Position numbers and translations under genes: made by a program. A DNA stretch of 64,000 nt from Pristiophorus japonicus (Eukaryota). Under the pieces are notes generated by a model that was not told where the DNA came from, did no database searches, and saw only the letters and a program-made list of their open reading frames with translations. Of the stretch, positions 541 to 56,690 are shown one piece after another (positions within the stretch are counted from its first letter, which is position 1; each line of letters starts with the position of its first letter). The DNA lies in contig NC_091989.1 of assembly GCF_044704955.1 (NCBI RefSeq), positions 104,470,001-104,534,000 on the forward strand, written 5' to 3'.

Positions 541-1749
541 CCAGCCTAATTCATTTCTATCTCTCCAGTGCAGGGGTACTTAACACAATCATGGCACCAC
601 TATAATTGCTGTCTCTGAGGTCACCTAATGCAAAAGACTCCAAGGACGATGCCTTGACCAAATAAGCGAACAAGTCGTGGTAAGCGACCATACAATACAT
701 ATACATAGTGAATGGGTTTAATGGCAGGATCAATGTTCACTGAACGTACATATGTAAACCAAACTCACACCGGGGTATTTGATCGGACGATGGTGCTCAT
801 GGGATACCCATGTGAATTCAGGTGGATCTAAGGGCTATGATCGGAGAAAAGAATGTGGGGACTCTCTATAACGTACAATAAACAACACACGATCTCCCCC
901 TCCACTTTTACTCTTGTTTTGTCATTTGTTAGTTTCAACGTTCATAGGGATGAGATAGGCCAGTCAGTTCATCTGACAGTTCACTATCACAGCTGAATCA
1001 AGCGTGTTGTTACATTTCCACAACCATGGATCAGACAAATAGGCTCCCCTTATTTACAGCAAAATGCGCATCGCTGATTTTGACATAACCATTTAAGCTG
1101 ATTAACATGGCGAATTTGATTGTTTTGCATAATGGCTCACGAGCATTAAATACACAGACAGGAGATTTTTTTTTACACTGATCAGGAGTTGCTATAGGAA
1201 TAGGCGGAACTAAATCCACCAGTACAATCAACAAAGCTTTAGCAACACAACAACGAGAAAGGAGTACTCACAATCCAGAATTTCCTCCGTGTTTGCGCCA
1301 GAGAGAAGTGTAATCTGGAGGCAACCGAGATACATGGCTTTAAAGATCGCGCATTTTTGGGCGTAAGATAGTTATACGTGTAACTACATTACGCCCATAA
1401 TTTTTTTAAGTGGGTGCATTAAACCCTGAGTCTGCACGACTCACCCGTCCACAATCCTTGCCAGGGCCCGCCTCTCATAGGAGTACTTTTAGAATGCACG
1501 TCGGATCTCGCTAGAAATAACGAAAATTGTGAATCTTTGCCCTGTGTTTAGGATGTCCTAACAGCCGATAACCCGAAAGAATCTCGTAACATTCCTCCAG
1601 ATTTGCTCATAATCAATCATCAATTAAAAACAATTGGCAATAGCAATGGTGTAAGAAACATATTATATGCCATTAACCGACAAAACCAGAATAGATTTAG
1701 GGTGAAATGTGCCGCTTGCTGTTTGCTTTCAGTTAGGATCTAGTTGGTT

Positions 1750-1933: not shown

Positions 1934-1988
1934 ATGGCGGTGTGCTCCGTGCTTTTGTGCATATCTTTGCTGGGAATTCTGTACAGAG
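1934..1988 (+). CDS. Gene A exon 1, signal peptide MAVCSVLLCISLLGILYR
   Basis: ATG at 1934, hydrophobic leader, donor AG|gtgtgt in phase 1; similar to the gene B leader. Confidence 0.8.
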
Positions 1989-4900
1989 GTGTGTTTCCTT
2001 ATCTTACCACTCCATGCTTATCAAAAAAAATCTGGTGTTCACAAAATTCGGCATATTTTGTGCACATTTCTCTCATTTTTCTCATTGTGTTATTAATGTG
2101 GCTAATTTTCTGTTTTTTCATTTCTAAGTCGTAATTTGTTCTTTTTCTAAAGTATGCAAACCATTATATCAGCATTCTTGTTATTTTCGTTTAAGTAACT
2201 TCGAACAAATTTTCGAAGATTCTACAGCTGTTGTGTTGCAAAGTTTGATAGAGTGCGTTTCCAATTTGATTGCTGGTGTTTCTTATTTCTATTTTACTTC
2301 TCTTAATTATTTTTCTTTATCTGATGTGTGCAACTGTAATCGCCATTCTTGTTTATTTTCCGATAGCCGTTGAAGTAGATTCGAACAAAGTGGACCAATT
2401 CCCTAGACACATGAAGGTTGCCAGGGGCACAAATGTTTCCATGTTCTGCACATTTCCCATATTTCAAGATGCCCCCGATGTTTATTGGAGGAGACGCGGC
2501 GAGGAGACGTCTCTGGAGCCAGACAGCAGAAAGCAATTTAATGTAAAGAAGGGCAGAGGGTCATTTGATGTCCTGAATGCGAGTGTCGCAGACTCTGGAA
2601 TGTATTACTGTACAGTAAAACATAATCAAACCACTGTTGGAGATGGAAGTGGCTCCCAGCTTACTGTGTTCGGTAAGTATCATTGTGCCGGGGAGTGGGA
2701 GATTCACAGCAGTGTGCGGTACATGTAAATCTCAATAGTGGGGGCCATTTGAACTTTTATCACTGGATGAAAACCTGCTGATGCAAATTCGTTTTACACT
2801 TCTCTCGATTTTCTTTTCCATTGACACAGGTATACTCCTGCCCGCCGATTGGCTATCGCCCATTTTGCGCTGCTCCCAAAATCAATTTCACAGCTTCATA
2901 CGAACATAAGAGCATAAAAATAGGAGCAGGAGTAGGCCATTTTGCCCCTCGAGCCTGCGCTGCCATTCAATAAGATCATGGCTGATCTGATCATGGACTC
3001 AGTTCCACTTCCCTGCCCGCTCCCCATAATCTTTACTCCCTTATCGCTCAAATATCTGTTTATCTCCGCCTTAAATATATTCAATGACCCAGCCTCCACA
3101 GCCTCCACAGCTCTCCGAGGCAGAGAATTGTATAGATTTACAAGCCTCTGAGAGAGGAAATTCCTCCTCATCTCAGTTTTAAATGGGTGGCCACTTATTC
3201 TAAGACTATGTTCCCTAGTTTTCGTTTCCCCTATGAGTGGAAATATCCTCTCTGCGTCCACCTTGTCGAGCCCTCTCATTATCTTATGTTTCAATAAGAT
3301 CACCTCTCATTCTTCTGAACTCCAATTTGTATAGGCCCAACCTACTCAACCTATCCTCATAAGTCAACCCCCTCACCTCCGGAATCAACCTAGTGAACCT
3401 TCTCTGAACAGCCTCCAATGCAAATATATCCTTGCTCAAATATGGAGAACAAAACTGCATGCAGTGTGGCATTACCATTACCCTGTACAATTGTAGCAGG
3501 ACTTCTCTGCTTCTACCTCCCTTGCAATGAAGGCTAACATTCCATTTGCCTTCCTGATTACTTGCTGTACCTGCATACTAACTTTTTGTGCACAAGGACC
3601 CCCAGGTCTCTCTGTACTGCAGCACTTTGCAATTTTTCTCCATTTAAATTATAATTTGCTTTTCTATTATCTCTGCTAAAGTGGATAACCTCACATTATA
3701 CTACATTTGTCAAATTTTTGCCCACTCACTTAGCCTGTCTATATCCCTTTGCAAATTTTTGGTGTTCTCCTCACAATTTGCTTTCCCACCCATTTTTGCA
3801 TCATCAGCAAACTTGGCAACATTACATTCAGTCCCTTCATCCAAGTCATTAATATAGATTGTAAATAATTGAGGACCCAGCACTGATCCTTGCGGCTCCC
3901 CACTCGTCACTGTTTGCCAACCGGAAACTGACCCACTTATCCCGACTCTCTATTTTATGTTAATTAGCCAATCCTCTACCCATGCTAATATATTACTCCC
4001 AACCTCGTGATTGTCCTTCCAAAGTGCTTTACATGCAATTAGTTCTTTTGGAAGTGCAGTTACAGTTGTTATGGAGGCAAGATACTGGAATAGAATAATT
4101 ATTTAAATCTTGGCTTAAAATTAATAACTTGGATTCGATTGCCAGATTTCTTCTCACCAAAATAGCGGAGTCGATGAGCGACTATGGGAACAATGTTAAC
4201 ACCTCTTAGTTCAGCTCTTTTATATAACATTAAAAGCCATCTACTCCACCCAACACGGTGCCTTCATTACAAGCTCGGCAGAACAACGTCTTGCTACAAC
4301 CCTGTTTATTTCACACACCAGGGCACATTTGCCCCCACTGCTTGAAATTGCCAACCTAATATTTTCTGCACAGAATTGCCCAAAATCTGGAATTGTCTCT
4401 CCCAGAAGGATGTGGATGGAAGGACAATTGGAGCTTTCAAGTTTGAGGTGGATAGATTTTCGTTAAGCATGGCTATCAATGGATATGGGGTTAAGTGGAC
4501 AGATGGATTTGAGGTACAGATCAGCCATAATCTAATTGAATGGCAGAGTAGATTCGAGGGGCTAAAAGGCCTCCTCCTGTTCCTATGTCCGCAGTTTAGG
4601 CTGTGTACTTCCATCGCGAACTTATTTGAGACGGCCAAACTAATTTCACAAAGGAATCATACCACATTGAGAGGGGAGGTGTTGATCTTACACTCATTAC
4701 TGGATTGGAACCCAACTCCTAGAGCTTGCAGAAACCCAATGCATCTGATTGTCCCTCTGCCTTAGGCCAATTGCGTTTTCTTTTATACACTCACAACATT
4801 TAAATTACGGGTAGATTATCACCGAACTTTCTATAAACGCCTGGACTCCCATATTCGTAATTCATGATTTCCAGTTACACTCCACCAATCCCAGACTGAA

Positions 4901-7900
4901 GTTAGGCAGGAGATCAAGAGAACACCACCCTCTTCCTCCTCCATGGAAATTCTACCGCATTACATATTAGACCTAAACAGATCCATGGGAAAGGAATGGA
5001 GGAATTCTGAGCTTTGGTTGGGCAGGGAATACGGTGCTGCTGGGAATAAAGGCTAGCATAAATTTCCAAGTTAATAATGCCCCAAATTTAAAAATTTGCT
5101 ATTACCAACATATCGGAACAATAAACATGTAAGAAAAAGATGTTAAGAAGATTGTTTGTAATAAATTGACAAACCAATGTAAACCTAATGAAGGATTCTA
5201 TTTCCAGCTAAACAGTAACTAGCTCCAGCGGACAAAACTTCACCTTAACCATAACTGATGGTTGTAGGACTGATATAAGCAGAATCGTCTTCAGGCAAAA
5301 CTTGTTCAACAGAGCAAATAGACTTCGGGAAGGGCAAAAACCCTGGAATTATATAAGACATGCACTCTGAGTTAGGATTTCCTATTCGGTTACCCCCATC
5401 TGTATGGATGTTGTGATCTATACAGATATACATAATTATCAATATAACCCTTTCATGACGTGAAAAATATTCCAGCCCTCGGTTCGCGCTCTGGAGAAAG
5501 TATATTAGAGAAAGCTGCATGATCTGAAATCTCCCCCACACAAACTGAAATGCTGAGTTAGCAACTGGAATGCGCGGGTTCTAATCTATAGATTAGCAGC
5601 ATCCAGTCTGCTGTCTGTGTAGACAACGGAGATATTTCGATATATTGGCAACAATTCTCCTTCTCATATTCACCGTTATATAAAATACGTTTCGCAACTT
5701 ATGAAATATCCCTAAAACGAACAATTTTGAAAGAAACACACACAATGTTTAATACCGCCAAGTTTATTAATGAATAACAAGATATGGTTCCACTGTTCGT
5801 GCAGATAGAGTTGCGCTGTCTCCGATATATTCGGACAGGAACCTCACTCGGGGTCACTGCTGCCAACCACAATCCGCGCCAGGATCTGATACCTCCATTG
5901 GAAACAGTGCCACGGGGCTCCCTATATGTTACCGATCCTGGGAGACTCGCCCTCTTTGCTTACAGTTTCCAATACATTCCTTCATTTTGCTGTGCGCCGT
6001 AAAACAATTTATAAAGTAAATGCGAACACGAAGTAAAATCAAAAACGTCAGCGCGGATAACTATTGTGGCAGTAGGACTGTAACCGTATAACCAGGGTAG
6101 GCAAATGAGAATGTGTTCTTTTAAATTGAAAAAATCATATTTTTTTCTGTTAAAGTTACCCCAACCCCGCTGAAAATCGCTCCTGTTGAAAGGATTTCCG
6201 CGACTTCTCTGAAACTCGAGTGCAAAACGGCTGCCTTTTTCCCGGAGGATTTAGAAATCGCCTGGCGAAGAGATGGTGACGAAATTCTGACCGGAATAGC
6301 AATCGTGAAAAATAGGAGCGCGGAGCTGTATGAGGTTTCCAGCTGGTTGGAAGAAGCACAGCCTGTTCAGAGCGGAGTTGTTTATACATGTCTGGTGTCT
6401 CATGTCTCTCTTCTGATGCCCGCCAGTGTCAGCTACACAGTAAAGCAAGGTAAGATTTGGACAGATTATGCATGAAACTGCCGCCAACATATTTCAAGGG
6501 CATTTCTCCGATGACGCAGAATTATTTGAGTGTTATTAACCTATGTCTCGTCTATCTACGTATTAACGCAATCAGCACATCTAAGATTATTACTAGAAGT
6601 GACCCCTCCATATAGTTCATCAATAGACTAGACAGCATTGAACCTAACATAGATCCGGTAGAGCTCTGTCTAGAACTCTACTGCTCCCCAGACAGAGCCT
6701 TTATTTATCACTTTCCAATTTTTCCCGAATGCCATGAGGCTGAAATTGCTTCAAAAGCCTCACGTACAGAACTTTTGCAAGTATCTTCCAAAAATATAAA
6801 GGAAGTATTACCTGGATTTCCTTCATCCACTGAGCAACTTCTCTCCTCGATTGCTTGTGGATTGATGAAACAAGACGCAGTGCTTCGAAATCCACTCTGG
6901 CTACCAGTAGAGCTATGGATTCTTTAGACCAATAAGTAACAGTTTATTAAATGTTCGGAACAGTTTTTATCACTGTGGATGTTCGAGAAAAAGTAAGGGA
7001 TGATGGAAATTACTCTGCAGATGGAAACAATTTGGCACTTGACCCCTGTGCCAATGAGAACCAGTCTCCCATGAGGGGAGTCTACGCCAGGCTATTTGCA
7101 TGAAAATCACGTGCCTTAAAGCAGTTATGGCGGGCCTGATATAATTTTCGCTGCTCTCCGGAAATAACCCGGTGGGCTGCGAGCTAATTCGGGGATATCA
7201 TGACCAGGTAATGGAGGAGCGGGTTGCAGCACCCAGATTATCGTTATGGGGTCCATAGGGCCTTCCTGTTTTTCCTAGTTTCAAAAACATAATTGAATGT
7301 ACCCGTTCATATCTCTTCATCTCTATCGCTTGTAAAACTGGCCACAGAGTGCAGGGCTTATCAGTTCTATCCAGAAATGTTCATCATAGAACCTCGATTT
7401 GGATATGAAGAGTAGCCTACTGCCTGAGACAAAGGCAATTGCCCCAAGCAACAGGTGCTCTCTGACAGTACAAGGCTCCGTTGCTGCTAAATCCACCGGG
7501 AGGACGCTGAGCACCTCGAGTCTCGTCGGAGAACTTGGAGAAATCAAGCGCAGGCAACGGAAAGAGTGTGCGGCAAACCAGTCGCACCCACCCTTTTCCT
7601 CAACGACTGTCTGTCCCGTCTGTGACAGGGACTGTGGTTCTCATTTTTTACTGTTCAGCCATCTAAGGACTCATTTTTAGAGTGGAAGTTTTCTTCGATT
7701 CCGAGGGACTGACTATGCTGATGATGACGGTGAAATCTACCGACCACATTTTGAGGCCATTAACGCACCGTTAACGCCGATGTGGGCAAGTTCAAAACGA
7801 TCGCCATGCAGTCCTGTTTAAAGTATCCATTTAATAGACTGCAGGCCTCTATATAAACCAATCATTGTTGCTTTCATTCTATAATAATTATATGCAACAG

Positions 7901-8046
7901 TTTTATATCTTGGTTTCAATCCTACATTGTAGGCCACAGTTTCAGCATCCGGCTCCTCAGAATTGCTCGGCTCGTTCTGGGTTTTTTGATCATTCTTGCA
8001 CTGACGGGTATTATTGTGGACCATGTAAAAATAACTTCCATTCAAG
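1934..8046 (+). CDS. Gene A: spliced IgSF type I membrane receptor, leader-VJ-C1-TM, putative activating receptor (SIRP-/NKp30-like family); exons 1934-1988, 2367-2672, 6156-6449, 7933-8046, terminal exon uncertain
   Basis: Four exons with canonical GT-AG boundaries, all phase 1, join into one open frame: signal peptide, V-set, C1-set and TM. Paralogous in every exon to gene B. Confidence 0.9.
2367..2672 (+). CDS. Gene A exon 2, Ig V-set domain with germline J-like G strand (...SMFCTFP..VYW..DSGMYYC..GDGSGSQLTVF)
   Basis: Acceptor ttttccgatag, donor G|gtaagt, 306 nt. B-strand Cys, C-strand Trp, DSGxYYC and diglycine GxGS-x-L-x-V motif. Confidence 0.93.
2896..4010 (-). mobile_element. CR1 LINE 3' fragment (gene A intron 2)
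   Basis: PQGSVLGPQLF, KFADD, TRGH-type C-terminus, tail. Confidence 0.92.
4380..4590 (+). mobile_element. Old CR1 3' end fragment
   Basis: IWNCLSQK..FKFEVDRF and CR1 3'UTR. Confidence 0.7.
6156..6449 (+). CDS. Gene A exon 3, Ig C1-set domain (VTPTPLKI..LECKTAAFFPEDLEIAW..LYEVSSWL..YTCLVSHVSL..)
   Basis: Not in the ORF track (no start codon). Acceptor ttctgttaaag, donor G|gtaaga, 294 nt open. C1 signatures CxxxxF(Y/F)P, W and YxCxVxH. Confidence 0.93.
7500..7730 (+). mobile_element. RTE LINE 3' end
   Basis: CPVCDRDCGSH..SHLRTH zinc knuckle and (ATG)n tail; same family as 34968-43533. Confidence 0.8.
7933..8046 (+). CDS. Gene A exon 4, transmembrane exon GHSFSIRLLRIARLVLGFLIILALTGIIVDHVKITSIQ
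   Basis: Acceptor cattgtag, donor G|gtaaga, 114 nt open in phase 1; hydrophobic span preceded by Arg. Confidence 0.85.
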
Positions 8047-8139
8047 GTAAGAACACGTTTTATTCATTCAGCAAATCAACTTCAAAGTATACAAACAGAT
8101 AGGATTGGTTTTATGTAGATGAGAAATGTATGTTTGCCA

Positions 8140-10020
8140 GCTATTTGTTTATAAGCAGCGGCAGAGAGCATCAGCTGATTAGCAAGAGGGAGCCCCCGAG
8201 CGCCAGTGATTTAAAAGGAGCGGGGCAGAGAGCAGCAGCTGATACCAGACAAACAGAGATGAAAACTCAAAAATTACGCTATTGTCAGTATAGAATGAGG
8301 AGTGGCGAGAGCCGAGGGATCATAGTTAATTGTCTAATTTCTCATCTATCAAAGTTTTAAGACCATAGTATACTTTAAAAGAAAAAATAAAGAATTGGAT
8401 TTATATAGCGCCTTTCACGACCACAGGACGTCTCAAATTATTTACAGCCAATGAAGAACTTTTGGAGTGTAGTCACTGTTGTAATGTGGGAAACGTGGCA
8501 GCCAACTTGCGCACAGCAAACTCCCACAAACAGCAATGAGATAATGACCAGATAATCTGTCTTCCTTATGTTGATTGAGGGCCAAATATCGGCCAGACAA
8601 TTTAGGTAAACAAATAGATCTGAAAACGGTGAGGCCGAGAGTGCCAAAGAGGGAAGGCAGGGTAAGTCACAGGTCAATATTTAATTTAATGCACATCTAA
8701 CTTAAATTAGATCAAGTAATTAGTTACAAAAATAAAGAATATCAGCTAAGTTGATTAATTACATAAACTTTAATTGATTAAAGAAATAAAACACAGTTAT
8801 ATAGGAATGATAGATTTGTCGCAACTGCAGCATGTGGGAGTTTGTGGGCAATATCGCAATCCAGAACAACCATATCTGAAGTAAGTGTCTGCATCTTGAG
8901 AAACCTCAGCGTTGTTAAGCTGGAATCCGAGGTGCATCAGGTGGGGCATCACGTAGGCTAGAGGAGAGTTCTCTGGTCAATTTGATCCAGGAGGCATTCA
9001 TACCTCTTGGGTTAGACAGGTCTGGGTAGTGGTAATGGACATGAGGGTATGACTGTGAGATAGGCGAGTCAGGTGCTGGAGGAACCTTAATCTTTGCCCG
9101 CATCCAGATTCTCGCTGCCTGTGTGGATGAAAGCAAAGTAAGCAGGGTGGATAAGCAAACTTACAACAGCACCGTAGTACAGGAGGCCATTTAAATGAGG
9201 GGAGTGAAATAGAATGTGGCAGTGATAGGGTACAGTAAAATCAAGGGCTAAATACTATTCTCTGCAGCCACAATGGAGAGTTCTGAATGTTGTGTTGCCT
9301 GCACCGTGCCAGGATTAAGGGTATCTCCTCGTGGCTGGAGAAGAACTTGGAGTGGGATGGGGGAGGATCCAGTTGTCGTGATGCATGTAGAAACCAACAA
9401 CATAAATAGAACTAGCAATGAGGTTCTGCTGAGGCAGTTTGAGGAGCCAGGATCCAAAATAATAAATAGAACGTTAAAGGTAATAATCTCTGGATTACTA
9501 CCTGAGACAAGCGCAAATTAGCACAGGGTCAAGTTGACTGCATGGTGGAAAGTGTGGTGTGGGAGACAGAGGTAATCATTCAAGAAGCACTGGTACCAGT
9601 ACTGGGGAAAGAAGATGCTGTTCTGTTGAGACAGACTTCACTTAAACTAGGTTGGGGCTACTGTCCTGGCGAATCAAATAACTAGGGCTGTAGATAGGGA
9701 TTTAAACTTATAAAAAGCAAGTCTTCAGGTGAGGGGAAATTTATAAATCTAAAGTGAAAAATCAGGGCAATAGAGCAATGTACTGGTTCGGGTAATAATA
9801 AGCAGAGTGTGGCAGGAAGGGACAGAGAGTTTAATGCTAATAATGTATCAGTGAATAAGGTCAAATCAGAGAAAAATAATAAAATGTTAAACATAAAGGT
9901 GCTTTACCTGAATGCACAAAGCATTCGTAAAATAGCATACAAATTAATTGCACACATAGAGATAAATGGGTTTGATCTAATAGCCATTAGAGAGCCATGG
10001 TTGCATGGTAACCATGAAAT
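8140..10020 (+). mobile_element. Old CR1 5' portion (ORF1 and EN start)
   Basis: ORF1 esterase-like remnants; LKVLYLNAQSIR-type EN start. Confidence 0.7.
8390..8599 (-). mobile_element. DeuSINE (SacSINE1-like) 3' part
   Basis: Reverse-complement match to the copy at 11742-12170. Confidence 0.7.
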
Positions 10021-10022
10021 CA

Positions 10023-11603
10023 GAACATAAGAAATACAAGCAGGAGTAGACCATTTGGTCCCTCACGCCTGCTCCGCCATTCAATAAAATGATGGTTGAT
10101 CTGACCTTGGCCTCAACTCCGCTCCCTATAACCCTTGACTCCTTATCATTCAAAAATCAGTCTATCTCCACCTTAAATGTATTCAATGACCCATAGATTC
10201 AAGACCCTCTGAGAGAAGAAATTCCTCTTCATTTTTGTTTCAAATGGGCAACCCCTTATTCTGAAACTATGCCCCCTAGTTCTAGATTCTCCCATGAGGG
10301 GAAACATTCTCTCTGCATCTATCCTGACAAGCCCCCTCAGAATCTTATACATTTCAATAAGATCACCTCCCATTCATCTAAACTCCAATGATTATAAGCA
10401 CAACCTGCTCAACCTTTCTTCATAGGACAAACCCTTCATCTCAAGAATCAACTTCTTTGAACTGCCTCCAAAAGAAGTATATCCCTCTTTACATAAGGAG
10501 ACCAAACTGTATGCAGTACTCCAGTGGTTGCAAGATTTCACTACTTTTATACTCCATCCCCCTGCAATAAAGGCCAGCATTCCATTTGCCTTTCTAATTA
10601 CTTGCTGTACCTAGAATCATAGAAATTTACAGTACAGAAGGAGGTCATTTTGGCCAATTCGTGTCCACGCCAGCTGACCAAGAGCTATTCAGCCTAATGT
10701 CTTGGTCCATAGCCCTGTAGGTTATGACACTTCAATTGCACATCCAAGTATTTTTTTTAATGTGCTGAGGTTTTCTGCCTCTACCACCATTTCAGACAGT
10801 GAGTTCCAGACCCCCACCACCCTCTGGGTGAAGAGATTTCCCCTAAACCTCCCATCAATTACTTTAAATCTATGCCCCCTGGTTGTTGACCCCACTGCCA
10901 AGGGAAACAGGTCCTTCCTATCCACTCTATCCCCTCATAATTTTATAACCCTCAATCAGGTCTCCCCTCAGTCACCTTTGTTCCAAAGAAAACTGACCCA
11001 GCATCTCAATCTTTCCTAATAGACAAAATTCTCCAGTCCAGGCAACATTCTTGGAAATCTCCTCTTTCCAGTGCAAGTACATCTTTCCTGTAATGTGGTG
11101 ACCAAAACTGCACACAGTTCTCTACTGTGACTTAACCAGTGTTTTATACAGTTCAAACATAACCTCCTTACTCTTGTATTCCATGCCTCGACTAATAAAG
11201 GCAAGTATTCCACATGCTTTCTTCATCACCTTTTCTACCTATCCTGCTACCTTCAGCGATCTGTGGATTTGTACTCCAAGGTCCCTTTGTTCCTCTACAT
11301 CTGCAAGCTAACTTTCTGTGTTTCATTTACAAGGACCCCCAGATCCCTCTGTACTGCAACATTTTTTGATCTCTCCCCATTTAAATAATAATTTGTTTTT
11401 TTACTTTTCCTACCTAAGTGGATAACCTCACATTTCCCCACATTATACTCCATCTGCCAATTTTTTGCCCACTCACTTAGCCTATCTACATCCCTTTGCA
11501 GATTATTTGTGTCCTCCTCACAATTTGCTTTTCCACTTATATTTGTATCATCAGCAAATTTGGCTACATTACACATAAAGATTGTAAATAATTGAGGTCC
11601 CAT
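10023..11603 (-). mobile_element. CR1 3' fragment with a second CR1 subfamily copy nested at ~10613-11295
   Basis: Two CR1 tails; the outer sequence resumes across the inner copy. Confidence 0.85.
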
Positions 11604-11698
11604 TAGCGATTAAAACGCTTTGCTACCAAATTGCTGACAACATAGAAAAACGATACTTTCAACACAACAATTTTCATAATTAATTCAGTTTCTTACAG

Positions 11699-11703
11699 GA
11701 TAA
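11699..11703 (+). CDS. Candidate terminal coding exon of gene A (G|GA TAA = Gly-stop)
   Basis: Good acceptor ttcagtttcttacag in unique sequence; a phase-1 join gives an immediate stop. There is no independent support. Confidence 0.3.
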
Positions 11704-11741
11704 TTCAAGTAGTAACCGCTGAACATCGAGTGCAATTTTGA

Positions 11742-12170
11742 GCCTTGGCAGAGTGGTAGCTCCTCACTTTGAGTCAGAAAGTTTGGATTCAATTCTTACT
11801 CCAGAGACGTGTGCGCAAAATCTAGGCTAATATTTCAGCGCTGCACTGAGGAAGTCCCGTCTGCCCTCTCGGATGGACGCAAAAAAAAATCCCATGGCGC
11901 TATTTCGTAGATGAGCATGGGAGTTCTTCCCGATGTCCTGGCGAATATTTATCCCTCAATCCACTTTACTACAAACGGTTATTTCGTCATTTATCTCATT
12001 GTTCTTTGTGGGACGTTGCAAATTACCTGCTGCTTTTCCCTACATTACAACAGCGACTACACTTCACAGGTACTTCAATTGTTGTTTTGGACGCCCTATA
12101 TTCCTTCGGAAATACTCTTTGGAAAGTCCTGACGTTATAAAAGGTGCTATAAGAATTCAACTTCTGTCTT
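11742..12170 (+). mobile_element. tRNA-headed Deu-domain SINE (SacSINE1-like)
   Basis: A-box TGGCAGAGTGG, degenerate B-box, Deu core CCGTCTGCCCTCTC..ATCCCATGGC.CTATTT..GTCCTGGC.AATATTTATCCCTCAA. Confidence 0.75.
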
Positions 12171-12986
12171 GTATTTTCCAAGGTATGGTTGAATAATTCA
12201 TGTCACAGGTGCCATTTTACGAATGCTCGTGTTCATTATTGAATTAACGTCTGAAAAAACTGCGGGTTTGGTATTCTGGGACAATTTTTTCAATTGGTGT
12301 ACAGGCCTCTCAGAGTGAGCTGTTTTCATGTAGTTACTTTTCCATTTTCTTCTGTTTTTTCCTCTTGTCAATGCGCGGATGCTTGCTGGGATGTCCACAG
12401 CCTTCTCCATATATTGCTCACGTGGCCACAGTTCCCGTTTGAGAATGCAGAGTGTGTACCGACAGGCATCACATGGTCAATCCGATCCCGTTCTCATTAG
12501 GCTGGCAATTTCCAGCAGCGGCCCATGGATAACACTCAGAAGCAGGATATAATGCTAATTGCTCTTTTCCTCTCGCTTGGCGCTCAGGCCAGTTTCAGCG
12601 TTTCAAATGCTGCCAGAACTGGGATCATTTAATACACCACAGACATGCAATCTAACCTGGCATATTCTGATTTGTATGGCTAGGTGCAATACCCATGGGT
12701 TCCTTGAGATGTGAATTTATTCAGGATGAAATGTAGATATTATATATGTGCAAGAGAGTATTGGAGACGCAATACTTTCAGTGAGTGCAGACTTTAGAGA
12801 TCCAAAGATTTCCATTCGGATATTCATATAACTAAGAGTCGTATTTTTGTTTCAATATCATTCCACATTGAGTGCAGTGAAAACCATTCCGTGCGACATC
12901 AATTGTGGTTTAGGTAATCGGTTGTTAATTTTTATAATAGGTAATTCTAATATAGAAACGATCAAGTACACAATTACATATACGCA

Positions 12987-14160
12987 TCCACATAAAAGGT
13001 TATTGCACAAGATAAAAGTTCACGGGATTGGAGGTAATATATTAGCATGGATAGAGGATTGCCGAGCTAACAGAAAACAGAGAGTCGGGATAAATGGTTC
13101 GTTCTCGGGTTGGCAATCAGTAACTAGTGGGATACCGCAGGGATCAGTGCTGGGATCTCAAATATTTACAATCTATATTAATGACTTGGAAAAAGGGACC
13201 GAGTGTTACATAGCCAAGTTTGCTGATGATACAAAGATGGGAAGAAAAGAAATGTGTGAGGAGGATACAAAAAGTCTGCAAAAGGACATAGACAGGCTAA
13301 GTGAGTGGGCAAAAATTTGGCAGATGGGGTATAATGTTGGAAAGTATGAGGTCATGCACTTTGGCAGAAAAAAATCAAAGAGCAAGTTATTATTTAAATG
13401 GAGAAAAATTGCAAAGTGCTGCAGCACAGCGGGATCTGGGGGTACTTGTGCATGAAACAAAAAAGCTTAGTATGCAGGTACAACAAGTGATCAGAAAGGC
13501 CAATAGAATCTTGGCCTTTATTGCAAAGGGGATGGAGTATAAAAGCAGGGAAGTCTTGCTACAGTTATACAGGGTATTGGTGAGGCCACACCTGGAATAC
13601 TGCATGCAGTTTTGGTTTCCATATTTACAAAAGGATATACTTACTTTGGAGGCAGTTCAGAGAAGGTTTACTAGGTTGATTCCGAAGATGAGGGGGCTGA
13701 CTTATGAGGAAAAGTTGAGTAGGTTGGGTTTCAACTTTTAGAATTCAGAAAAATGAGAGGTGATCTTAACAAAACGTATAAGATTATGAGAGGGCTTGAT
13801 AAGATGGATGCAGAGAGGATGTTTCCACTGATAGGGGAGACTAGAACTAGAGGGCATAATCTTAGAATAAGGGGCCACCCATTTAATACTGAGATGAGGA
13901 GAAATTTCTTCTCTCAGAGGATTGTAAATCTGTGGAGTTCGCTGCCTCAGGGAGCTGTGGAAGCTGGTACATTGAATAAATTTAAGACAGAAATAGACAG
14001 TTTCTTAAACGATAAGGGAATAAGGGGTTATGGGGAGTGGGCAGGGAAGTGGACCTGAGTCCATGATCAGATCAGCCATAATCGTTTTAAATGGCGGAGC
14101 AGGCTCGAGGGGCCATATGGCCTACGCCTGCTCTTATTTCTTATGTTCTTATGTTCTTAT
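12987..14160 (+). mobile_element. CR1 LINE 3' fragment
   Basis: RT ORFs 12847, 13301, 13753; (TTCTTATG)n tail. Confidence 0.92.
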
Positions 14161-16109
14161 TAGTGAAAGAGTAACGCCAAATTAATGTTAAAAACAAATG
14201 TAAGATTTACATCCCAATATTTTGTGGCATCCTGAGATTATGCTATATGTATTTAAAATTGAGCAAAGTTTGTCTTAGTCCTAGAATGAATTAACGTAAG
14301 AGTATTTTGATGATTATTGTCCAATCGCAAAGAGAGGATACATTTGAAGAACGTTCCTTTAATTTAATAATAGTTGGGATCTTGATGTAGTTGTGAGGTG
14401 TCTGTGAGTCTAATTATATTGATGCAGACATGCTCTAAAAGGGCCCTGCCTGTGGATGGAATACAGAAATAATAAACAAATTAATTACAATATTTAAAAA
14501 CACAGGAACGATGGGCCGAATGTCCTGCTTCCGTGCCGTACATTTCTATGATTCTATGATTGTAAATTTTGTTTTGAATGATCAGGTAAAGAACTGCTGA
14601 TAATCTCTGCCTCCGCTGCTCACAATTCCACGAGACCAATAGCTTAGCAGTTGGGAAAGAATAACGCGTGTCCAAGCACAGCTGGAAAAGTAAACAGGAC
14701 CATACGAAAGCATCGAAACGGATAAAGGGTTCACGCAGCATTCGCTTACAGCCGGTTTCCATTGCACTTCGCCGCACACTCTTTCTGTAACATTAGATTG
14801 TACAAACGTAACTGTTCATTATCTCCTGTATAAAATGAGCTTAATGCAGTCTATGTAAATGCAATGTAAAAAATAACAGACTTCATGCCAATATTTTTTT
14901 GCGGGCTGACACGTATCTTGATCGATGAATGTTTCTAGCTGGCGCTATTCCAATAAATCTAATTGTTGATATTTATACATGTCAAAGTTATATCAAGTGT
15001 GCAAACCTTTCATATGGCTTATATTTTAAGATGTAAGTTAGAGAAGTGACTTAGAGGGAAAGTTCTGTTCATAGAATTATAAATACGAGACGTGTTGGAG
15101 GCCCATTAACATTGATATTTATTTGTACTCAACATCCACGATAAGAATTTATGTCATGAGCAAAACCAATTCAAATGAAGGTTTGCTCTCTGAGTTGGAC
15201 ACTGTGAATATGGAATGGTTAAAATACGCGGTTGCATTGCGGGATACATCTTATTCGGCAGATCTACGAAAACAAATGGGAGGAGAGAAGCAGTAATTGC
15301 AACGAGAACAGTGAAAATGTATTCAACCACCTGTAGTTTGTCCTGGACTAAACTTGAAAGGCTCCATCCATTCGCACCCAAAGACATATTATTTCACCAG
15401 GGCAATTTAAAGACACAAATGACTGCTAAATAGCAAAGTAGTTAATCACAGTAACTAACTACTAATTTACTTAACAGCGAGCTAAATCCACCTATGTATT
15501 AAATCTACACCTTGTGACCAAATAGTTCAAGAAATAAACTACAGATAACTAATAAATAAATAAAGTAATTAATTCATTCATTAATTAAGATATGGCAGTA
15601 CAAGCAGTGTGTCGGGATTTTAGGGTGGAAGTTTGTGGACAAAGAGACTGTCCCACACTGTCACAGTGAAGTGAGAATGACTGTGCTTGACATCAAGACA
15701 GCATTTTACCGAGTGTGGCATCAAGGAGCCCGAGTAAAATTGAAGTCAATGGGAATCAGGGAGAACGCTCGCCACTGGCTGAACTCATACCTAGCACAAA
15801 GGAAGATGGTTGTGGTTGTTGGAAGTCAATCATCACAGCCCCAGGACATCATTGCAGGAGTTCCTCAGCGCAATGTCTAGGCCCAACCATCTTCAGCTGC
15901 TCAATCAATTACTTTCCCTCCATCATAAGGTCAGAAGTGGGGATGTTCACTCATGATGTCACAGTGTTCTATTTGGAAAACCTCATATGATGTAGCAGTA
16001 CACGTATGGCCTTGGGCTGATAAGTATCAAGTAATATTTGTGCCACACAAGTGCCAGGTAATGACTATCTCCAACAAGAGAGTCTAACAATTCCCCCAAC
16101 TTGACATTA

Positions 16110-16661
16110 TGTATTGTATGGGGTTAATCACATAGGGTTAATTATGATATTTAGTCATTCACAGTGTGTCTCTGCTCCGTTTCGTGGATTGTTGTTGCTA
16201 TATATAGAGAGAGAAAGCGACCTTGGATGCACACCAGCTTGTTATGAGACGGTCCGCGGCGCAAGATCTCATGCTTTGTGGACAAGCTTCTAGGGCCTTA
16301 CAGATTAGGAGTTGGCCATAAGCCACATGCACCCATGTTTTGTTCAATAGTATGTTTATTTGATAGTATAAAGGTACAGCACTGTCCCGTAGCTCTTTGA
16401 ACTTCACCTTGGACCGTGATTCGTGAGCGGTGCAGGGACCCCCAAATCTCCAGACCAGCCGTCCCTTGTGGAGTTCCCGATAGGCAGAAGGCCGTGAGCA
16501 TTGTTGCATCTAATCATACTTTCCTTTTCTTCGTAAACTGTAGCATTAATGTTTCTTTTCTCTCAGTAAACGGTATCTTATTCTTTACTTCATTTGTCTT
16601 GTCTCTTATTTAACATTCATCCAGATCCCGAACCTGGGTCTATTATTATTTATCCAAAATA
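16110..16661 (+). repeat. ERV LTR1 (552 bp)
   Basis: TGTATTG...CCAAAATA; TATAAA box; direct repeat of the other two LTRs. Confidence 0.93.
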
Positions 16662-16664
16662 TTT

Positions 16665-16682
16665 TGGCGTCACGAACAGGAT
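16665..16682 (+). other. Primer binding site TGGCGTCACGAACAGGAT, complementary to the 3' end of tRNA-Ser(CGA); second copy at 18809-18826
   Basis: Lies 3 nt after the LTR. The reverse complement ATCCTGTTCGTGACGCCA matches the vertebrate tRNA-Ser(CGA) 3' end as I recall it; not database-checked. Confidence 0.8.
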
Positions 16683-18245
16683 CTGGTAAAATCTTTAAGA
16701 GAAAAGACAAAAAGCAGTCTCCTCCTGCGGGAGAGAAGTATAGAATACCAGGGTGGAGCACGAGGGATGAGGGTTTTGGCTCTCTTGCCAATGTGCTAGC
16801 CTGGCTTGGACCCCCGCAACATGGGGATATGCCGTTATTGGAACAGAACAAAGATAGAGCCGTACCCCACGCGGTACTGTCTCTCCTGGAGGAAGCGGGC
16901 TTCCCACAGGAGAAAAATAGTCCCCCAGAAATGGGATGGATTTTGTTGACAGCATTAAGGGCGATGTGCAAAGAACGTAAGGAAAGTGAGGCAGAAAACC
17001 TACAGTTAAAAACAGCTGTTAAGGTTTTGGAAAGTCAAAACTCGACCCTGACTGAAGCGGTCAGCACTGCACAAGAACGGGCGGACAAGGTCAATGAACA
17101 ATCAGAAACTTTAATATGCTGTTTGGCGACAGTACAAAATAAAAAGAAAGCCAGACCACGGAAATTACAGATGGATTTGAAATATACCTTTTGTATTTGC
17201 TACTGCATGTGGTATGGGCTTGCTCAATCCGATCCCAGTGAGTGTTTAAAAGCCCATGCAAAATCATCTGGGGAATGTATACAAGCTGGAAAAAATGGAG
17301 AGGGGGAGGGGAACGGGAGGAAATTAAAGACCCTCCCCCATACGCTCCGAGCAAAGGAAGCTAGACCCCTTATGACAAATAAGACAAAACAGCAAGATGG
17401 TGAACAGCCGGTAACCACTAGAGGGGTGCGTGACTTCACCACAAGTGAGTTCCAAGAAATGGTTACTATAGGGGTCCGGCAAAAATATCCCTCTGCCGTT
17501 GATTGGGAAGGGGAGGTAAAACCTTGGAATACTATGGCAGAGGGTGCGATACAGTTGCGCAGCATGGCAACACAGGCAGGAATATATTACCAACTATATG
17601 GGGGCCAGATCAGGAGCTCTTTATGGCAGGAATGCGGAGCAGGCTGATGAAGAGTGGCCCTCCTATGATGAGGGGTGAGCTACTCGCATTATTGGGACCA
17701 GCCCAAGGGCAGTGGGTGGGGCACGCCTGCCTATTGTTAGGACAGTTAGAGGATGTAGAAGATCCCCTCGACTAGGGATGTGGCTGGGATCCGGGAGCAC
17801 TCCCCATTAGAACCACATCAACCCAAGCTCCCGGGGATCTGAGGCCACACATTCCGATTACTTACCTGGCAGGGGAGTAAACATAATTAGCTTTGTTGAA
17901 TGAAGAAAGACTTTGTGAATGTCTGTCTGTGAATGAAAGTACTTTTGTGATTTTTTGACTGCGGAATGAATTTTTCATGTGTCTGAAAACCTGTTTCGAA
18001 AAATATTGGAGCTGTCTGTTTGTTTTAGCTCCACCCACTTTTTCAAACAGAGTGAAGGTTTTTTTAACCCTTCGTAGTGTTGTCCTGTATGTGGGAAGTC
18101 TTAAATAAGTGTGAACCTTACAGGGGAAACCATACAAGGGCTCTTGGGGGCGATTATCATTAGACATGCGGTGTCCCCCTACAATAGCCCTGTTTGGCCT
18201 GTACAGAAACCCAACAAAAGTTGGAGGATGACTGTGGACTACCGA
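16683..18245 (+). pseudogene. gag: Truncated provirus A internal region: gag with deletions, foreign insert, start of RT
   Basis: ORFs 16664..17647 and 17503..17775 parallel the second copy. The region ends at RT motif VDYR. Confidence 0.8.
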
Positions 18246-18805
18246 TGAATTGTATGGGGTTAATCACATTGGATTAATTATGATATTTAGTCATTTCATA
18301 GGGTGTCTCTGCTCCCATGCCCTGTAGAATGTTGTTGCTATTTCGAGAGAGAGAGGGATGCGACCTTGAGATGCACACCAGCTTGTTATGAGATGGTCCA
18401 CGGCTTGAGCTCTCATGCTTTGTGGACAAGCACCTGGGGCCTTACAGATTAGGAGTTGGCCATAAGCCACATGCACCCATGTTTTGTTCAATAGTATGTT
18501 TATTTGATAGTATAAAGGTACAGCACTGTCCCGTAGCTCTTTGAACTTCACCTTGGACCGTGATTCGCGAGCGGTGCAGGGACGCCTAATGCTCCAGACC
18601 AGCCGTCGCTTGTGGAGTTGCCAACGGGCGGAAGGCCGTGAGCGTTGTTGCATCTTATCATACTTCTCTTTTCTTTGTAAACTGCATTATTAATGTTTCT
18701 TTTCTCTCACTAAACGGTATCTTATTCTTTACTTCATTTGTCTTGTCTCTTATTTAACATTCATTCAGATCCCGAACCTGGGTCTATTATTATTGATCCA
18801 AAATA
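18246..18805 (+). repeat. ERV LTR2 (internal, 560 bp, variant U3)
   Basis: Direct repeat followed by a PBS; joined directly to RT sequence with no PPT. Confidence 0.92.
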
Positions 18806-18826
18806 TTTTGGCGTTACGAACAGGAT

Positions 18827-51763: not shown

Positions 51764-51889
51764 CTATGTTATTCGTCTTTGTTTTTTAGTCTGCAGCTCG
51801 GCATACTCTGTGCTTCTTTCGCTATTAATGCGTGTTCCCGTTTTCTCTGAGCTAGTCAATACTACAGTCGCGTACGTCCCTTGTTCAGT
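51764..51889 (-). CDS. Gene B terminal exon TEQGTYATVVLTSSEKTGTRINSERSTEYAELQTKKQRRIT* (ITIM-like GTYATV, ITSM-like TEYAEL)
   Basis: Acceptor gctttacag in phase 0, TAG stop, AATAAA about 315 nt downstream. Confidence 0.78.
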   Translation of the reverse strand, partial: TEQGTYATVVLTSSEKTGTRINSERSTEYAELQTKKQRRIT

Positions 51890-52096: not shown

Positions 52097-52198
52097 CTGA
52101 GCGTACACTGTTCTCTCCTCTTCAAGTTTACGTCTTGGAGTTTTCCGGACTCTGTTCAAATCTAATGCAGCATAATTCACGGTCTCAGCCGCTGCTCC
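52097..52198 (-). CDS. Gene B cytoplasmic exon with ITIM VNYAAL and TVYAQ motif
   Basis: Open frame GAAAETVNYAALDLNRVRKTPRRKLEEERTVYAQ, donor CAG|gtagga. The in-phase acceptor position reads cat rather than cag. Confidence 0.7.
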
Positions 52199-52742: not shown

Positions 52743-52786
52743 CAGCTCTTCACAGCGGTCCGGTCCCTCTACACATTCTTCTTTAC
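52743..52786 (-). CDS. Gene B short cytoplasmic exon GKEECVEGPDRCEEL
   Basis: Acceptor cgtttccag, donor CTG|gtaggt; converts phase 1 to phase 0. Confidence 0.7.
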
Positions 52787-53468: not shown

Positions 53469-53570
53469 CTTCATTATTCTGCAGTCGGCATCGCGTCCCA
53501 ATGAAGATCATTAGCACTAGAAACGCCAATCCCCCCACCGCCCGGAAGTAAACTGAATTATCGACGCTAC
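53469..53570 (-). CDS. Gene B transmembrane exon GSVDNSVYFRAVGGLAFLVLMIFIGTRCRLQNNE
   Basis: Acceptor ttttgcag, donor G|gtaatg, 102 nt open; hydrophobic span followed by basic residues. Confidence 0.8.
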
Positions 53571-54815: not shown

Positions 54816-55127
54816 CTTGGTTAGATTTAGAAACAGTATATGTGACCACAGCTGGAGTCTGGAGGGAGACATGAGATACCAAACAGGTATAATTGGTGTC
54901 GCTCGGGACAGGCTGCGTCTCAGCCAAAGAGCTGGAAACTTCATACAGTCCCTCGGTGTTCTGCACTTTATTCGTATCTGTTATTAATGCAATTTCTACG
55001 CCATTTTTGTACCAAGTGAGGGTGAAATTCTCCGGATAGAACGCAGCCGTTTTACACACAAGAGTCAGAGACACAGATGAGTTCCCTTCAGTTGTCCCGG
55101 AGACAATCTTCAGTGGAGTTGGGGCCG
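54816..55127 (-). CDS. Gene B Ig C1-set exon (APTPLKI..LVCKTAAFYPENFTLTWYKNG..YTCLVSHVSLQTP..)
   Basis: Core of ORF 54766..55170; acceptor ttccgcag, donor G|gtatgt, 312 nt; strong similarity to gene A exon 3. Confidence 0.92.
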
Positions 55128-56169: not shown

Positions 56170-56479
56170 CATGTACAATTAGTTGTGAGCCGGTTCCATT
56201 TCCTCTAACTACTCCCCGATAGAACACTGCGCACTGATAGACCCCAGAGTCTTGGAAAGTCGCGCTCAGCAACTGAAAGTAACCGCTCGCTTTATTTTCC
56301 TGACCAAATTGTTTTCTTTTGTCGGTGCTTGTGCGCAGGTATTCATTCTCACCAATACACTCTTACCCAGTGTGGGTCCTGAGAGATGGGGAATATGCAA
56401 TAGAAGGTGATGTTCCCACCTCTGGACACAGTCGTTTGTTTGGGCGCTTCAGTCACACTAAACGAAATCTGGTTCGCTG
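56170..56479 (-). pseudogene. Gene B VJ-type V exon, frameshifted (..NITFYCIFPISQD..VYW / GENEYL..DSGVYQC..GNGTGSQLIVH)
   Basis: Acceptor tttccttccag, donor G|gtaagt. The two halves of the V domain are in different frames, switching right after the C-strand Trp. Confidence 0.88.
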
Positions 56480-56647: not shown

Positions 56648-56690
56648 CTGTGTAAATAATCCCCCGGAGAGTCAGGCACAGGAAAAGCAT
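56648..56690 (-). pseudogene. Gene B leader exon MLFLCLTLRGIIYT
   Basis: ATG at 56690, donor G|gtacct in phase 1; aligns with the gene A leader (LLCISLLGILYR). Confidence 0.7.

What the first reader, a model, noticed from the sequence alone, without database searches (positions are those of the whole stretch)
2367..6449. Germline-encoded VJ domain plus C1 domain: the layout predicted for the pre-RAG antigen-receptor ancestor
Seen: the V exon runs uninterrupted from strand A through YYC to a J-like GDGSGSQLTV (GNGTGSQLIV in gene B), then splices in phase 1 to a true C1 exon. No heptamer/nonamer RSS was found at either V exon. Established: TCR and IgL chains are VJ-C1, C1 domains are largely confined to jawed-vertebrate immune proteins, and the RAG-transposon model posits a VJ exon split by insertion. 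Inference: these genes are living relatives of that unsplit precursor, or an unusual germline-joined derivative.
Basis: partly seen in the sequence, partly recalled or inferred. Interest (0 to 1): 0.8.

Follow-up and report, generated by a model that had tools for sequence, protein, structure and literature searches.

The report
Shark SIRP-like V-C1 paired receptor genes
The antibody-like V exon and the C1 exon are real and belong to an intact shark gene, but it is one member of a large family of ready-made activating and inhibitory immune receptors of sharks, rays and chimaeras, which most resemble mammalian SIRP proteins and show no special tie to the ancestor of antibodies and T-cell receptors.

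Summary
Gene A (+ strand, 1934-14647) is an intact five-exon gene:
- split leader;
- one single-exon V-type domain ending in a J-like G-x-G-S-x-L-x-V;
- one true C1-set domain, joined in phase 1;
- a membrane helix with Arg and Asp 16 residues apart;
- a short tail with no tyrosine.

No RSS was found. Gene B (- strand, 56690-51764) has the same ectodomain layout and an ITIM/ITSM tail. Its V exon is frame-broken in this assembly.

Both genes belong to a multigene family of more than 60 predicted proteins, found only in cartilaginous fishes. NCBI names them inconsistently, most often "SIRP-alpha-like". The family splits into inhibitory members (26) and activating members with R-x16-[DE]H (9), and the two types are interspersed in the tree. 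That is a paired-receptor family working like SIRP-alpha/beta.

It is not a germline-joined IgL/TCR gene: the best antigen-receptor V match scores 29 bits, and the V model shows no C'/C'' strands. It is about equally distant from IgL, SIRP-alpha and UrIg2, so nothing marks it as the pre-RAG ancestor. Non-rearranging VJ-C1 shark genes (UrIg, UrIg2) are already published.

This scan had already met dead copies of the same family on other DNA of this genome (s1-878160, s1-878620).

The parts
1934..1988 (+). Gene A leader exon (MAVCSVLLCISLLGILYR, then one base of the next codon); split leader, phase 1 donor
   Evidence: Read directly from the sequence. ATG at 1934, GT donor at 1989-1990.
2367..2672 (+). 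Gene A V exon: short V-type Ig domain with a J-like GSGSQLTV G strand in the same exon
   Evidence: V-set 4.6e-11; pLDDT 93; nearest folds IgNAR V, TCR V-alpha, CD79b. About 75% identical to family members.
6156..6449 (+). Gene A C1-set exon
   Evidence: C1-set 7.7e-8; model; MHC II beta-2, TM 0.88. 73-74% identical to family members.
7933..8046 (+). Gene A connecting-peptide and membrane exon (…RLVLGFLIILALTGIIVDH…): Arg and Asp 16 residues apart
   Evidence: Sequence. 75% identical to the Heptranchias protein P0175. The R-x16-[DE]H motif is present in 9 family members.
14586..14647 (+). Gene A last coding exon (GKELLIISASAAHNSTRPIA, stop); tail without tyrosine
   Evidence: tblastn with P0175, P0172 and P0189. 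Acceptor and frame read.
56648..56690 (-). Gene B leader exon
56170..56479 (-). Gene B V exon, 310 nt. The frame is broken after VYW at about 56350-56353. The family's conserved W-K-x-G is missing.
   Evidence: two in-frame pieces match P0118 at 67-72%.
54816..55127 (-). Gene B C1-set exon
   Evidence: C1-set 1.1e-12; 74-79% identical to P0118, P0188 and P0196.
53469..53570 (-). Gene B membrane exon. It is of the uncharged type used by inhibitory members. The family's conserved juxtamembrane Cys is replaced by Arg.
   Evidence: (84% identical to P0188).
52743..52786 (-). Gene B cytoplasmic exon 1 (GKEECVEGPDRCEEL). The donor could lie 4 nt further on.
   Evidence: compared with P0188.
52097..52194 (-). 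Gene B cytoplasmic exon 2, with ITIM VNYAAL and TVYAQ. The acceptor is ambiguous (52194 or 52183).
   Evidence: 76% identical to P0188.
51764..51889 (-). Gene B last coding exon (…GTYATV…TEYAEL…, stop)

Best explanation
The flagged stretch holds the V and C1 exons of gene A. Gene A is an intact five-exon gene for a type I membrane protein. It has one short V-type domain with the J-like strand in the same exon, one C1-set domain, a membrane helix bracketed by Arg and Asp-His, and a 28-residue tail without tyrosine.

Gene B lies 50 kb away on the other strand. It is a diverged paralogue with the same ectodomain layout, and its tail carries an ITIM and ITSM-like motifs. Its V exon is frame-broken here.

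Both are members of a clustered multigene family found only in sharks, rays and chimaeras. The family works as paired innate immune receptors:
- Inhibitory members probably recruit SH2 phosphatases through phosphorylated ITIM/ITSM.
- Activating members such as gene A probably signal by pairing their membrane Arg with an acidic residue of an ITAM adaptor of the FcR-gamma, DAP12 or CD3-zeta type.
- The V domain binds an unknown ligand.

Shown: gene anatomy, domain types, family membership, the two signalling types and their interspersion in the tree. Inferred: adaptor pairing, phosphatase recruitment, ligand binding and expression.

The genes do not rearrange. They share the VJ-C1 layout with SIRP, UrIg and antigen receptors without being demonstrably closer to the antigen-receptor ancestor than those are.
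For: - Exon maps and phases.
- Pfam V-set and C1-set. Family members show the same V-set plus C1-set architecture.
- Only one V exon and one C1 exon per gene in the window.
- Family size and range: one search found 552 hits; the single-domain hits at 35-78% identity that were fetched or looked up carry the same family V domain and, where named, are chondrichthyan proteins. Searches give more than 60 predicted proteins from 12 or more chondrichthyan genera, with several members per chromosome-sized contig and inconsistent NCBI names led by 'SIRP-alpha-like'.
- Signalling types: one search counts 26 members with an uncharged membrane helix plus ITIM/ITSM tail, and 9 with exactly R-16 hydrophobic residues-[DE]H and short tails.
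- Tree: one search puts gene A and gene B in two well-supported clades (100/99). Activating and inhibitory labels need at least 5 switches.
- Gene A's V is 75% identical to inhibitory Heterodontus members and 68% to an activating Heptranchias member. An ectodomain shared across signalling types is the paired-receptor signature.
- The family profile matches SIRP-alpha d1-d2 colinearly at 64 bits and d3 at 45 bits.
Against: - No RNA evidence for gene A. The runs found were DNA or hit only repeats. One 165-nt contig of run X7 starts exactly at the C1 acceptor, but it has 6 mismatches and may come from a paralogue.
- Gene A has Arg where the family nearly always has the second Trp of VYWW.
- Adaptor pairing and phosphatase recruitment rest on motif analogy only.
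- Homology to tetrapod SIRP is not shown. IgL scores slightly higher than SIRP with the family profile.
- No bony-vertebrate member turned up. The word-based searches could have missed one.
Confidence: 0.8

Rival explanations
1. These genes are surviving close relatives of the unsplit two-domain VJ-C1 precursor of Ig/TCR. The receptor tails would be later additions.
For: - The layout is single-exon VJ, then a phase 1 junction, then C1, with a split leader.
- The family predates the chimaera-elasmobranch split.
- The nearest folds of the V model are IgNAR V and TCR V-alpha.
- The family profile aligns colinearly across the V-J-C1 junction of light chains at about 69 bits.
- A two-domain VJ-C1 gene is the precursor drawn in PMC12227049, Fig. 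2 legend.
Against: - SIRP-alpha (64 bits) and UrIg2 (54 bits) score in the same range as IgL.
- The structural ranks are ties: Z 15.0 to 14.1 covers NCAM I-set and CD79b as well.
- The V domain shows no C'/C'' strands in the model and lacks the F/W of F/W-G-x-G (sequence).
- Many non-rearranging V domains carry the same J-like bulge (established knowledge).
- The white-shark member lies on a 193.5 Mb contig, whereas that species' MHC is on chromosome 19. This is a weak inference against MHC linkage.
Confidence: 0.1
2. The genes are germline-joined derivatives of a rearranging shark IgL or TCR gene.
For: - Sharks do have germline-joined IgL genes (PMC12227049).
- NCBI auto-names some family members 'immunoglobulin lambda-1 light chain-like' or 'TCR beta chain-like'.
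Against: - The best antigen-receptor V match of the V exon in the PDB is IgNAR V at 29 bits (E 8e-6), then TCR-beta at 25 bits. Family members score 100-170 bits.
- None of the top-150 hits whose sequences were fetched is a light chain or TCR chain.
- The genes carry membrane and ITIM or charged-helix exons that IgL lacks.
- There is no RSS remnant.
- The family is conserved from chimaeras to sharks.
Confidence: 0.03
3. The family is the true cartilaginous-fish orthologue of tetrapod SIRP, having lost or never gained the third domain.
For: - The most frequent NCBI name is 'SIRP-alpha-like'.
- There is a colinear d1-d2 match plus a d3 match.
- The family has paired inhibitory and activating forms.
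- The inhibitory tails carry two pairs of Y-x-x-L/V motifs. From memory, this is the same arrangement as in SIRP-alpha.
Against: - There is one C1 domain where SIRP has two.
- SIRP V does not appear among the 60 listed PDB sequence matches of the V exon, which reach E 0.0035, nor among the top structural matches.
- Activating members use Arg with a lower Asp-His, whereas SIRP-beta uses Lys (from memory).
- No synteny or tree could be made here.
Confidence: 0.3
4. The genes are B7-H6 or B7-family ligands, as NCBI's name 'NCR3 ligand 1-like' for several members suggests.
For: B7-H6 is also V plus a C1-like domain. NCBI gives several members that name.
Against: - B7-H6 is not among the 60 PDB matches listed for the family profile, the weakest listed having E 1.8e-23.
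- The G strand carries a J-like bulge.
- The family has ITIM/ITSM tails and charged-helix forms typical of receptors.
Confidence: 0.04

Closest known systems
SIRP-alpha / SIRP-beta (signal-regulatory proteins, tetrapods)
   Same: - A non-rearranging V domain with a J-like G strand, followed by C1-set domains.
- A family of paired inhibitory (ITIM) and activating (basic residue in the membrane helix, short tail) forms.
- The family profile aligns with SIRP-alpha d1-d2 at 64 bits and d3 at 45 bits.
- It is NCBI's commonest auto-name for the family.
   Different: - One C1 domain where SIRP has two.
- The V domain is shorter.
- Activating forms have Arg at the outer end and Asp-His at the inner end of the helix.
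- The family was found only in cartilaginous fishes.
- Orthology is untested.
UrIg and UrIg2 (non-rearranging shark VJ-C1 genes; PMC12227049, PDB 9dmx)
   Same: - Split leader, single-exon VJ domain, C1-type constant domains and no RSS.
- UrIg2 is the top PDB sequence hit of both C1 exons.
   Different: - UrIg has three C domains and is secreted. UrIg2 has 9-11 C domains. Here there is one C1 domain plus signalling modules.
- The best-aligned UrIg2 domain scores only 20-23 bits. The V-C1 profile score is 54 bits, below IgL and SIRP.
IgNAR V, TCR V-alpha and CD79b (Ig-beta) V-type domains
   Same: They are the nearest folds of the V model: Z 15.0-14.1, rmsd 1.6-2.2 over about 96 residues. Foldseek's top hit is the CD79b homodimer.
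   Different: Sequence identity is 21-28%. The ranks are tied with NCAM I-set domains. There is no rearrangement and no hypervariable loops generated somatically.
Ig light chains (V-J-C)
   Same: The match is colinear across FR3, the J-like strand and C1, at about 69-70 bits with the family profile. The V-to-C junction is phase 1.
   Different: - No RSS.
- No C'' strand or CDR2.
- No F/W before G-x-G.
- The protein is membrane-anchored with signalling tails.

Membership tests
Chondrichthyan V-C1 paired-receptor family (unnamed; NCBI 'SIRP-alpha-like' and other names) | V exon and C1 exon homologous to family members | tested here: met
   Gene A V is 68-75% and C1 is 73-74% identical to members. 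Gene B V pieces are 67-72% and C1 is 74-79% identical.
Chondrichthyan V-C1 paired-receptor family (unnamed; NCBI 'SIRP-alpha-like' and other names) | One of the two signalling modules: R-x16-[DE]H helix with a short tail, or an uncharged helix with an ITIM/ITSM tail | tested here: met
   Gene A has R-x16-DH and a conserved terminal exon. Gene B has VNYAAL, TVYAQT and TEYAEL.
SIRP (tetrapod) | V domain followed by two C1-set domains | tested here: not met
   Only one C1 exon per gene in the window. Most family models are V-C1.
SIRP (tetrapod) | Orthology by phylogeny or synteny | not testable with these tools
SIRP (tetrapod) | Paired ITIM and charged-helix forms | tested here: met
   26 inhibitory and 9 activating-type family members. 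The motifs were found, but their function was not tested.
Rearranging antigen receptors, including germline-joined IgL/TCR | RSS (heptamer-12/23-nonamer) at V or J, or clear membership of an IgL/TCR V family | tested here: not met
   The RSS scan is at chance level. The best antigen-receptor V match scores 29 bits.
Rearranging antigen receptors, including germline-joined IgL/TCR | Full V-set domain with C' and C'' strands (CDR2) and F/W-G-x-G-T-x-L-x-V | tested here: not met
   The model has no strand between C (38-43) and D (56-61). The motif is D-G-S-G-S-Q-L-T-V with no F/W.
UrIg / UrIg2 | VJ exon followed by three or more C1-type domains; secreted homodimer (UrIg) or 9-11 C domains (UrIg2) | tested here: not met
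   There is one C1 exon, then a membrane exon. The definitions come from PMC12227049.
Pfam C1-set (PF07654) | Score above the gathering cut-off, and a C1 fold | tested here: met
   33.0 and 48.6 bits against a cut-off of 21. Foldseek's top hits are MHC II beta-2 domains, TM 0.88.
Pfam V-set (PF07686) | Score above the gathering cut-off | tested here: met
   43.3 bits against a cut-off of 26. I-set follows closely at 37.8 bits. The domain is a short V/I intermediate.

The most novel reading that the evidence does not exclude
This cartilaginous-fish family is the surviving two-domain VJ-C1 lineage closest to the common precursor of UrIg/UrIg2 and the rearranging antigen receptors. That is the two-domain stage drawn in PMC12227049, Fig. 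2. On this reading it is not an offshoot of SIRP, and its paired-receptor signalling shows what the precursor did before RAG invasion.
Probability: 0.1. Interest if true: 0.8.

Novelty: new member of a known kind. Interest (0 to 1): 0.35.

Why it matters
Gene A is an apparently unannotated, intact member of an old family of two-domain VJ-C1 paired receptors, dating back at least to the chimaera-shark split. I found no paper that describes the family, and databases name it inconsistently.

The family adds a third non-rearranging VJ-C1 lineage in sharks, beside UrIg/UrIg2 and alongside SIRP. That makes it useful as an outgroup or comparator in trees of antigen-receptor origin, and for studying how activating and inhibitory tails are swapped.

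It does not change the picture of how Ig and TCR arose. This scan had already met the same family elsewhere in this genome.

Tried and rejected
- Germline-joined IgL/TCR: rejected on sequence distance, missing C'/C'' strands, signalling exons and no RSS.
- UrIg/UrIg2 membership: rejected on domain number and low similarity.
- B7-H6 reading: rejected.
- Structural ranking to choose between antigen-receptor V, SIRP V and I-set: uninformative. All top rows are tied within Z 1.
- RNA evidence: the small-share runs X5-X7 matched only the LINE fragments in intron 2, apart from one 165-nt contig.
- Heptamer-like CACTGTT just before the G-D-G codons of gene A: no nonamer partner at 12 or 23 bp and absent at the same place in gene B, so I take it as chance.
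- Literature searches for a description of the family under SIRP, shark, paired receptor or PRARP found none in the library held. The PRARP and UrIg J Immunol papers are not held.
- A V/C1 phylogeny with IgL, TCR, UrIg, SIRP, CD79 and NKp30 could not be built. Those sequences could not be brought in as stored proteins, and I did not type any from memory.
Every search used single exons by reference or database proteins.


Full report
**What is in the sequence**

The window has no N runs. It is rich in LINE and LTR-retroelement fragments. On the + strand the flagged stretch holds two exons of one gene, gene A.

- The V exon is 2367-2672. It is preceded by a polypyrimidine tract and AG, and followed by GTAAGT.
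- It reads AVEVDS…CTFPIFQDAPDVYWRRRGEE…DSGMYYCTVKHNQTTVGDGSGSQLTVF without a stop.
- The C1 exon is 6156-6449. It reads (V)TPTPLKIAP…LECKTAAFFPEDLEIAWRRDG…LYEVSSWLEE…VYTCLVSHVSL…YTVKQ.
- Both exons are phase 1 at each end, so the codon across the junction is G|TT.

I completed the rest of the gene:

- a split leader at 1934-1988;
- a membrane exon at 7933-8046;
- a last coding exon at 14586-14647. I found it by tblastn with the Heptranchias protein P0175 and read it.

All junctions are phase 1. The exon lengths (55+306+294+114+62 nt) give an uninterrupted 276-codon frame. All searches were made exon by exon, by reference.

**Gene B**

Gene B lies on the - strand and has the same plan:

- leader 56690-56648;
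- V exon 56479-56170;
- C1 exon 55127-54816;
- membrane exon 53570-53469;
- three cytoplasmic exons ending at 51764.

Its tail carries VNYAAL (ITIM), TVYAQT, GTYATV and TEYAEL.

Its V exon is 310 nt, which is not a multiple of three. After …VRVYW the frame runs into TGA, and it resumes one base off as GENEYL…. Relatives have VYWWKxGE at this place, so a short deletion has removed W-K-x. The family's conserved juxtamembrane Cys is also replaced by Arg. Gene B therefore looks like a pseudogene, or else carries an assembly error. I could not test this with reads, because my one reads call went to gene A.

A local search with the four exon translations against all stop-free stretches of the window found no further V or C1 exon.

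**Domain types**

| Exon | Pfam result |
|---|---|
| Gene A V | V-set 43.3 bits (cut-off 26); I-set 37.8 bits |
| Gene A second domain | C1-set 33.0 bits (cut-off 21); I-set 12.7 bits |
| Gene B second domain | C1-set 48.6 bits; C2-set_2 24.2 bits |

The AlphaFold model of the V exon used 30 aligned family sequences and reached pLDDT 93. It shows strands A, A', B, C, D, E, F and G. A loop lies where C' and C'' would be.

Its nearest solved folds are IgNAR V (Z 15.0), TCR V-alpha (Z 14.8) and CD79b (Foldseek rank 1). NCAM I-set domains are tied within one Z unit.

The C1 model (pLDDT 88.5) matches MHC class II beta-2 domains best, with TM 0.88 and rmsd 1.7-2.2.

The J-like strand is G-S-G-S-Q-L-T-V in gene A and G-T-G-S-Q-L-I-V in gene B, which fits G-x-G-S/T-x-L-x-V. 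The F/W that precedes it in antigen-receptor J segments is absent. From established knowledge, the same bulge occurs in many non-rearranging V domains (SIRP, CD79b, NKp30, CD8).

**No RSS**

A scan for CACAGTG-12-ACAAAAACC and CACAGTG-23-ACAAAAACC on both strands, allowing up to 3 mismatches, gave 0 and 1 matches. Chance expectation is 0.68 and 0.83. The single match (51774-51812) lies in the coding sequence of gene B's last exon.

**What the genes are**

An exhaustive HMMER search with the gene A V exon found 552 hits. Apart from giant multi-Ig proteins that score by summing many domains, the hits are proteins of 120-500 residues at 35-78% identity. Those I fetched carry the same family V domain, in most cases followed by C1, a membrane helix and a tail.

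Cluster look-ups and two word-based searches name the source organisms: Callorhinchus, Heptranchias, Heterodontus, Scyliorhinus, Chiloscyllium, Carcharodon, Mustelus, Pristiophorus, Mobula, Narcine, Hypanus and Pristis. Every named hit is a cartilaginous fish. Several members sit on the same chromosome-sized contig in each species, which points to gene clusters.

NCBI's automatic names disagree:
- tyrosine-protein phosphatase non-receptor type substrate 1-like (SIRP-alpha-like), the commonest;
- SIRP-beta-1-like;
- NCR3 ligand 1-like;
- Ig lambda-1-like;
- tapasin-related-like;
- CD276 homolog;
- TCR-beta-like;
- uncharacterized.

So the family is predicted but not named. The family alignment is well conserved: …VYWWKxGE…DSRK…DSGVYYC…GNGTGSxLxV-VPPTPLKI…CxTAxFYP…TWYKNG…GLYEVSS…VYTCLVSH….

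No stored protein is more than 79% identical to any exon of gene A or B. The two genes themselves are therefore not in the collections searched.

**Paired-receptor character**

- 26 have an uncharged helix, usually starting G-C-A-G-G, and a long tail with ITIM/ITSM motifs.
- 9 have exactly Arg, then 16 hydrophobic residues, then Asp/Glu-His, with a short tail. Gene A is of this type.
- The rest are partial models or lack a membrane segment.

A maximum-likelihood tree of 67 C1 domains splits the family into two clades with 100/99 support. Gene A falls in one clade, next to the activating Heptranchias genes P0175 and P0189 and the inhibitory Heterodontus genes. Gene B falls in the other, with P0118, P0188 and P0196. 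The activating and inhibitory labels need at least 5 switches on well-supported branches, which is no fewer than shuffled labels need.

Similar ectodomains with swapped signalling halves are what defines paired receptor families such as SIRP-alpha/beta. The Arg at the outer end of the helix recalls receptors coupled to FcR-gamma. That is from memory and was also raised by note s1-878485. Here I verified only the spacing and its conservation.

**Comparison with known VJ-C1 proteins**

A profile of 21 full-length family members was searched against the PDB. The colinear V-C1 matches were:

| PDB protein | Score |
|---|---|
| Kappa or lambda light chains | about 69-70 bits |
| SIRP-alpha d1-d2 | 64.3 bits (plus 44.8 bits for d3) |
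| UrIg2 V-C1 | 54.1 bits (plus 29.9 and 39.6 bits for C2 and C3) |

The single V exon finds IgNAR V at 29 bits, TCR-beta at 25 bits, VpreB at 23 bits and CD79b at 21 bits. The single C1 exons find UrIg2, Ig constant domains, SIRP, MHC I alpha-3 and MHC II beta-2 at similar levels.

The family is thus roughly equidistant from all of these. It is plainly not nested in IgL or TCR. A germline-joined light chain would be expected to match light-chain V domains far better than 29 bits.

Non-rearranging VJ-C1 genes in sharks are already published. UrIg is MHC-linked, secreted and has three C domains. UrIg2 is linked to IgH/TCR-alpha-delta and has 9-11 C domains (PMC12227049; PMC10751288). That work draws a two-domain VJ-C1 gene as the hypothetical first stage. 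The present family has that layout, but I have no evidence that it is closer to that stage than SIRP is.

**Reads**

Four DNA runs of one sample hold the stretch. Three small runs of a second study hold only its repeats. Two details are worth recording:

- A 165-nt contig of run X7 aligns from exactly 6155 to 6278 with 6 mismatches, and 41 unmatched letters precede it. That is what a spliced transcript of a close paralogue would look like.
- A DNA contig at about twice the local depth covers 2415-2632 with five differences. Four of them change amino acids in the C-to-D loop, including Arg back to the family's Trp.

**Verdict**

The grand interpretation is not specifically supported. Gene A is an intact, apparently unannotated activating member of a cartilaginous-fish V-C1 paired-receptor family that works like SIRP. 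Gene B is a damaged inhibitory member.

The scan had already met dead copies of this family in the same genome (s1-878160, 18.5 Mb upstream on this piece; s1-878620). Those notes also give the species as the Japanese sawshark, which I did not test.

Noticed in passing
window 56340-56360 (- strand): Gene B's V exon is frame-broken. After VRVYW the frame hits TGA and resumes one base off as GENEYL. The family's conserved W-K-x-G is missing, and the exon is 310 nt where a multiple of 3 is needed. It is either a pseudogene or an assembly error.
   Followed up: partly
window 2415-2632: A DNA contig of run X1, at about twice the local depth, differs at 2489, 2503, 2504, 2510 and 2511. Translated, these differences give R42W, E46D, E47Q and S49L in the C-to-D loop. 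This points to a near-identical paralogue or allele of the gene A V exon, with only amino-acid-changing differences.
   Followed up: no
window 6155-6278: A 165-nt contig of run X7 (kind not on record) starts matching exactly at the C1 acceptor, with 41 unmatched letters before it and 6 mismatches. It is possibly a spliced transcript of a close paralogue.
   Followed up: no
window 16550-23282: An LTR-retroelement remnant lies between the two genes. It has RT plus RNase H (20623-21771) and an integrase core (22734-23279) by Pfam. Upstream is a duplicated 365-aa ORF with no Pfam match (16550-17644, repeated at 18694-19911).
   Followed up: partly
window 1157-1362 (+) and 51873-52064 (-): The N-terminal extension of the Heptranchias gene model P0189 matches translated non-coding DNA upstream of gene A (40-52% identity). 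It also matches DNA between gene B's last two coding exons (38% identity). That part of the public model is probably mispredicted, and it hints at conserved flanking sequence.
   Followed up: no
window 53540-53560 (- strand); family proteins P0151, P0088, P0188 and others: Inhibitory family members share a Cys at the outer edge of the membrane helix (G-C-A-G-G), which could make disulfide-linked dimers. Gene B has Arg there.
   Followed up: no
proteins P0176 and P0169 (Heterodontus): Some public models join the C1 domain directly to the tail and skip the membrane exon. These may be soluble isoforms of family members.
   Followed up: no
window 51774-51812 (- strand): The only RSS-like match in the window (23-bp spacer, 3 mismatches) lies inside gene B's last coding exon, in the codons for …TEYAELQTKKQRR…. 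The number of matches is at chance level.
   Followed up: yes
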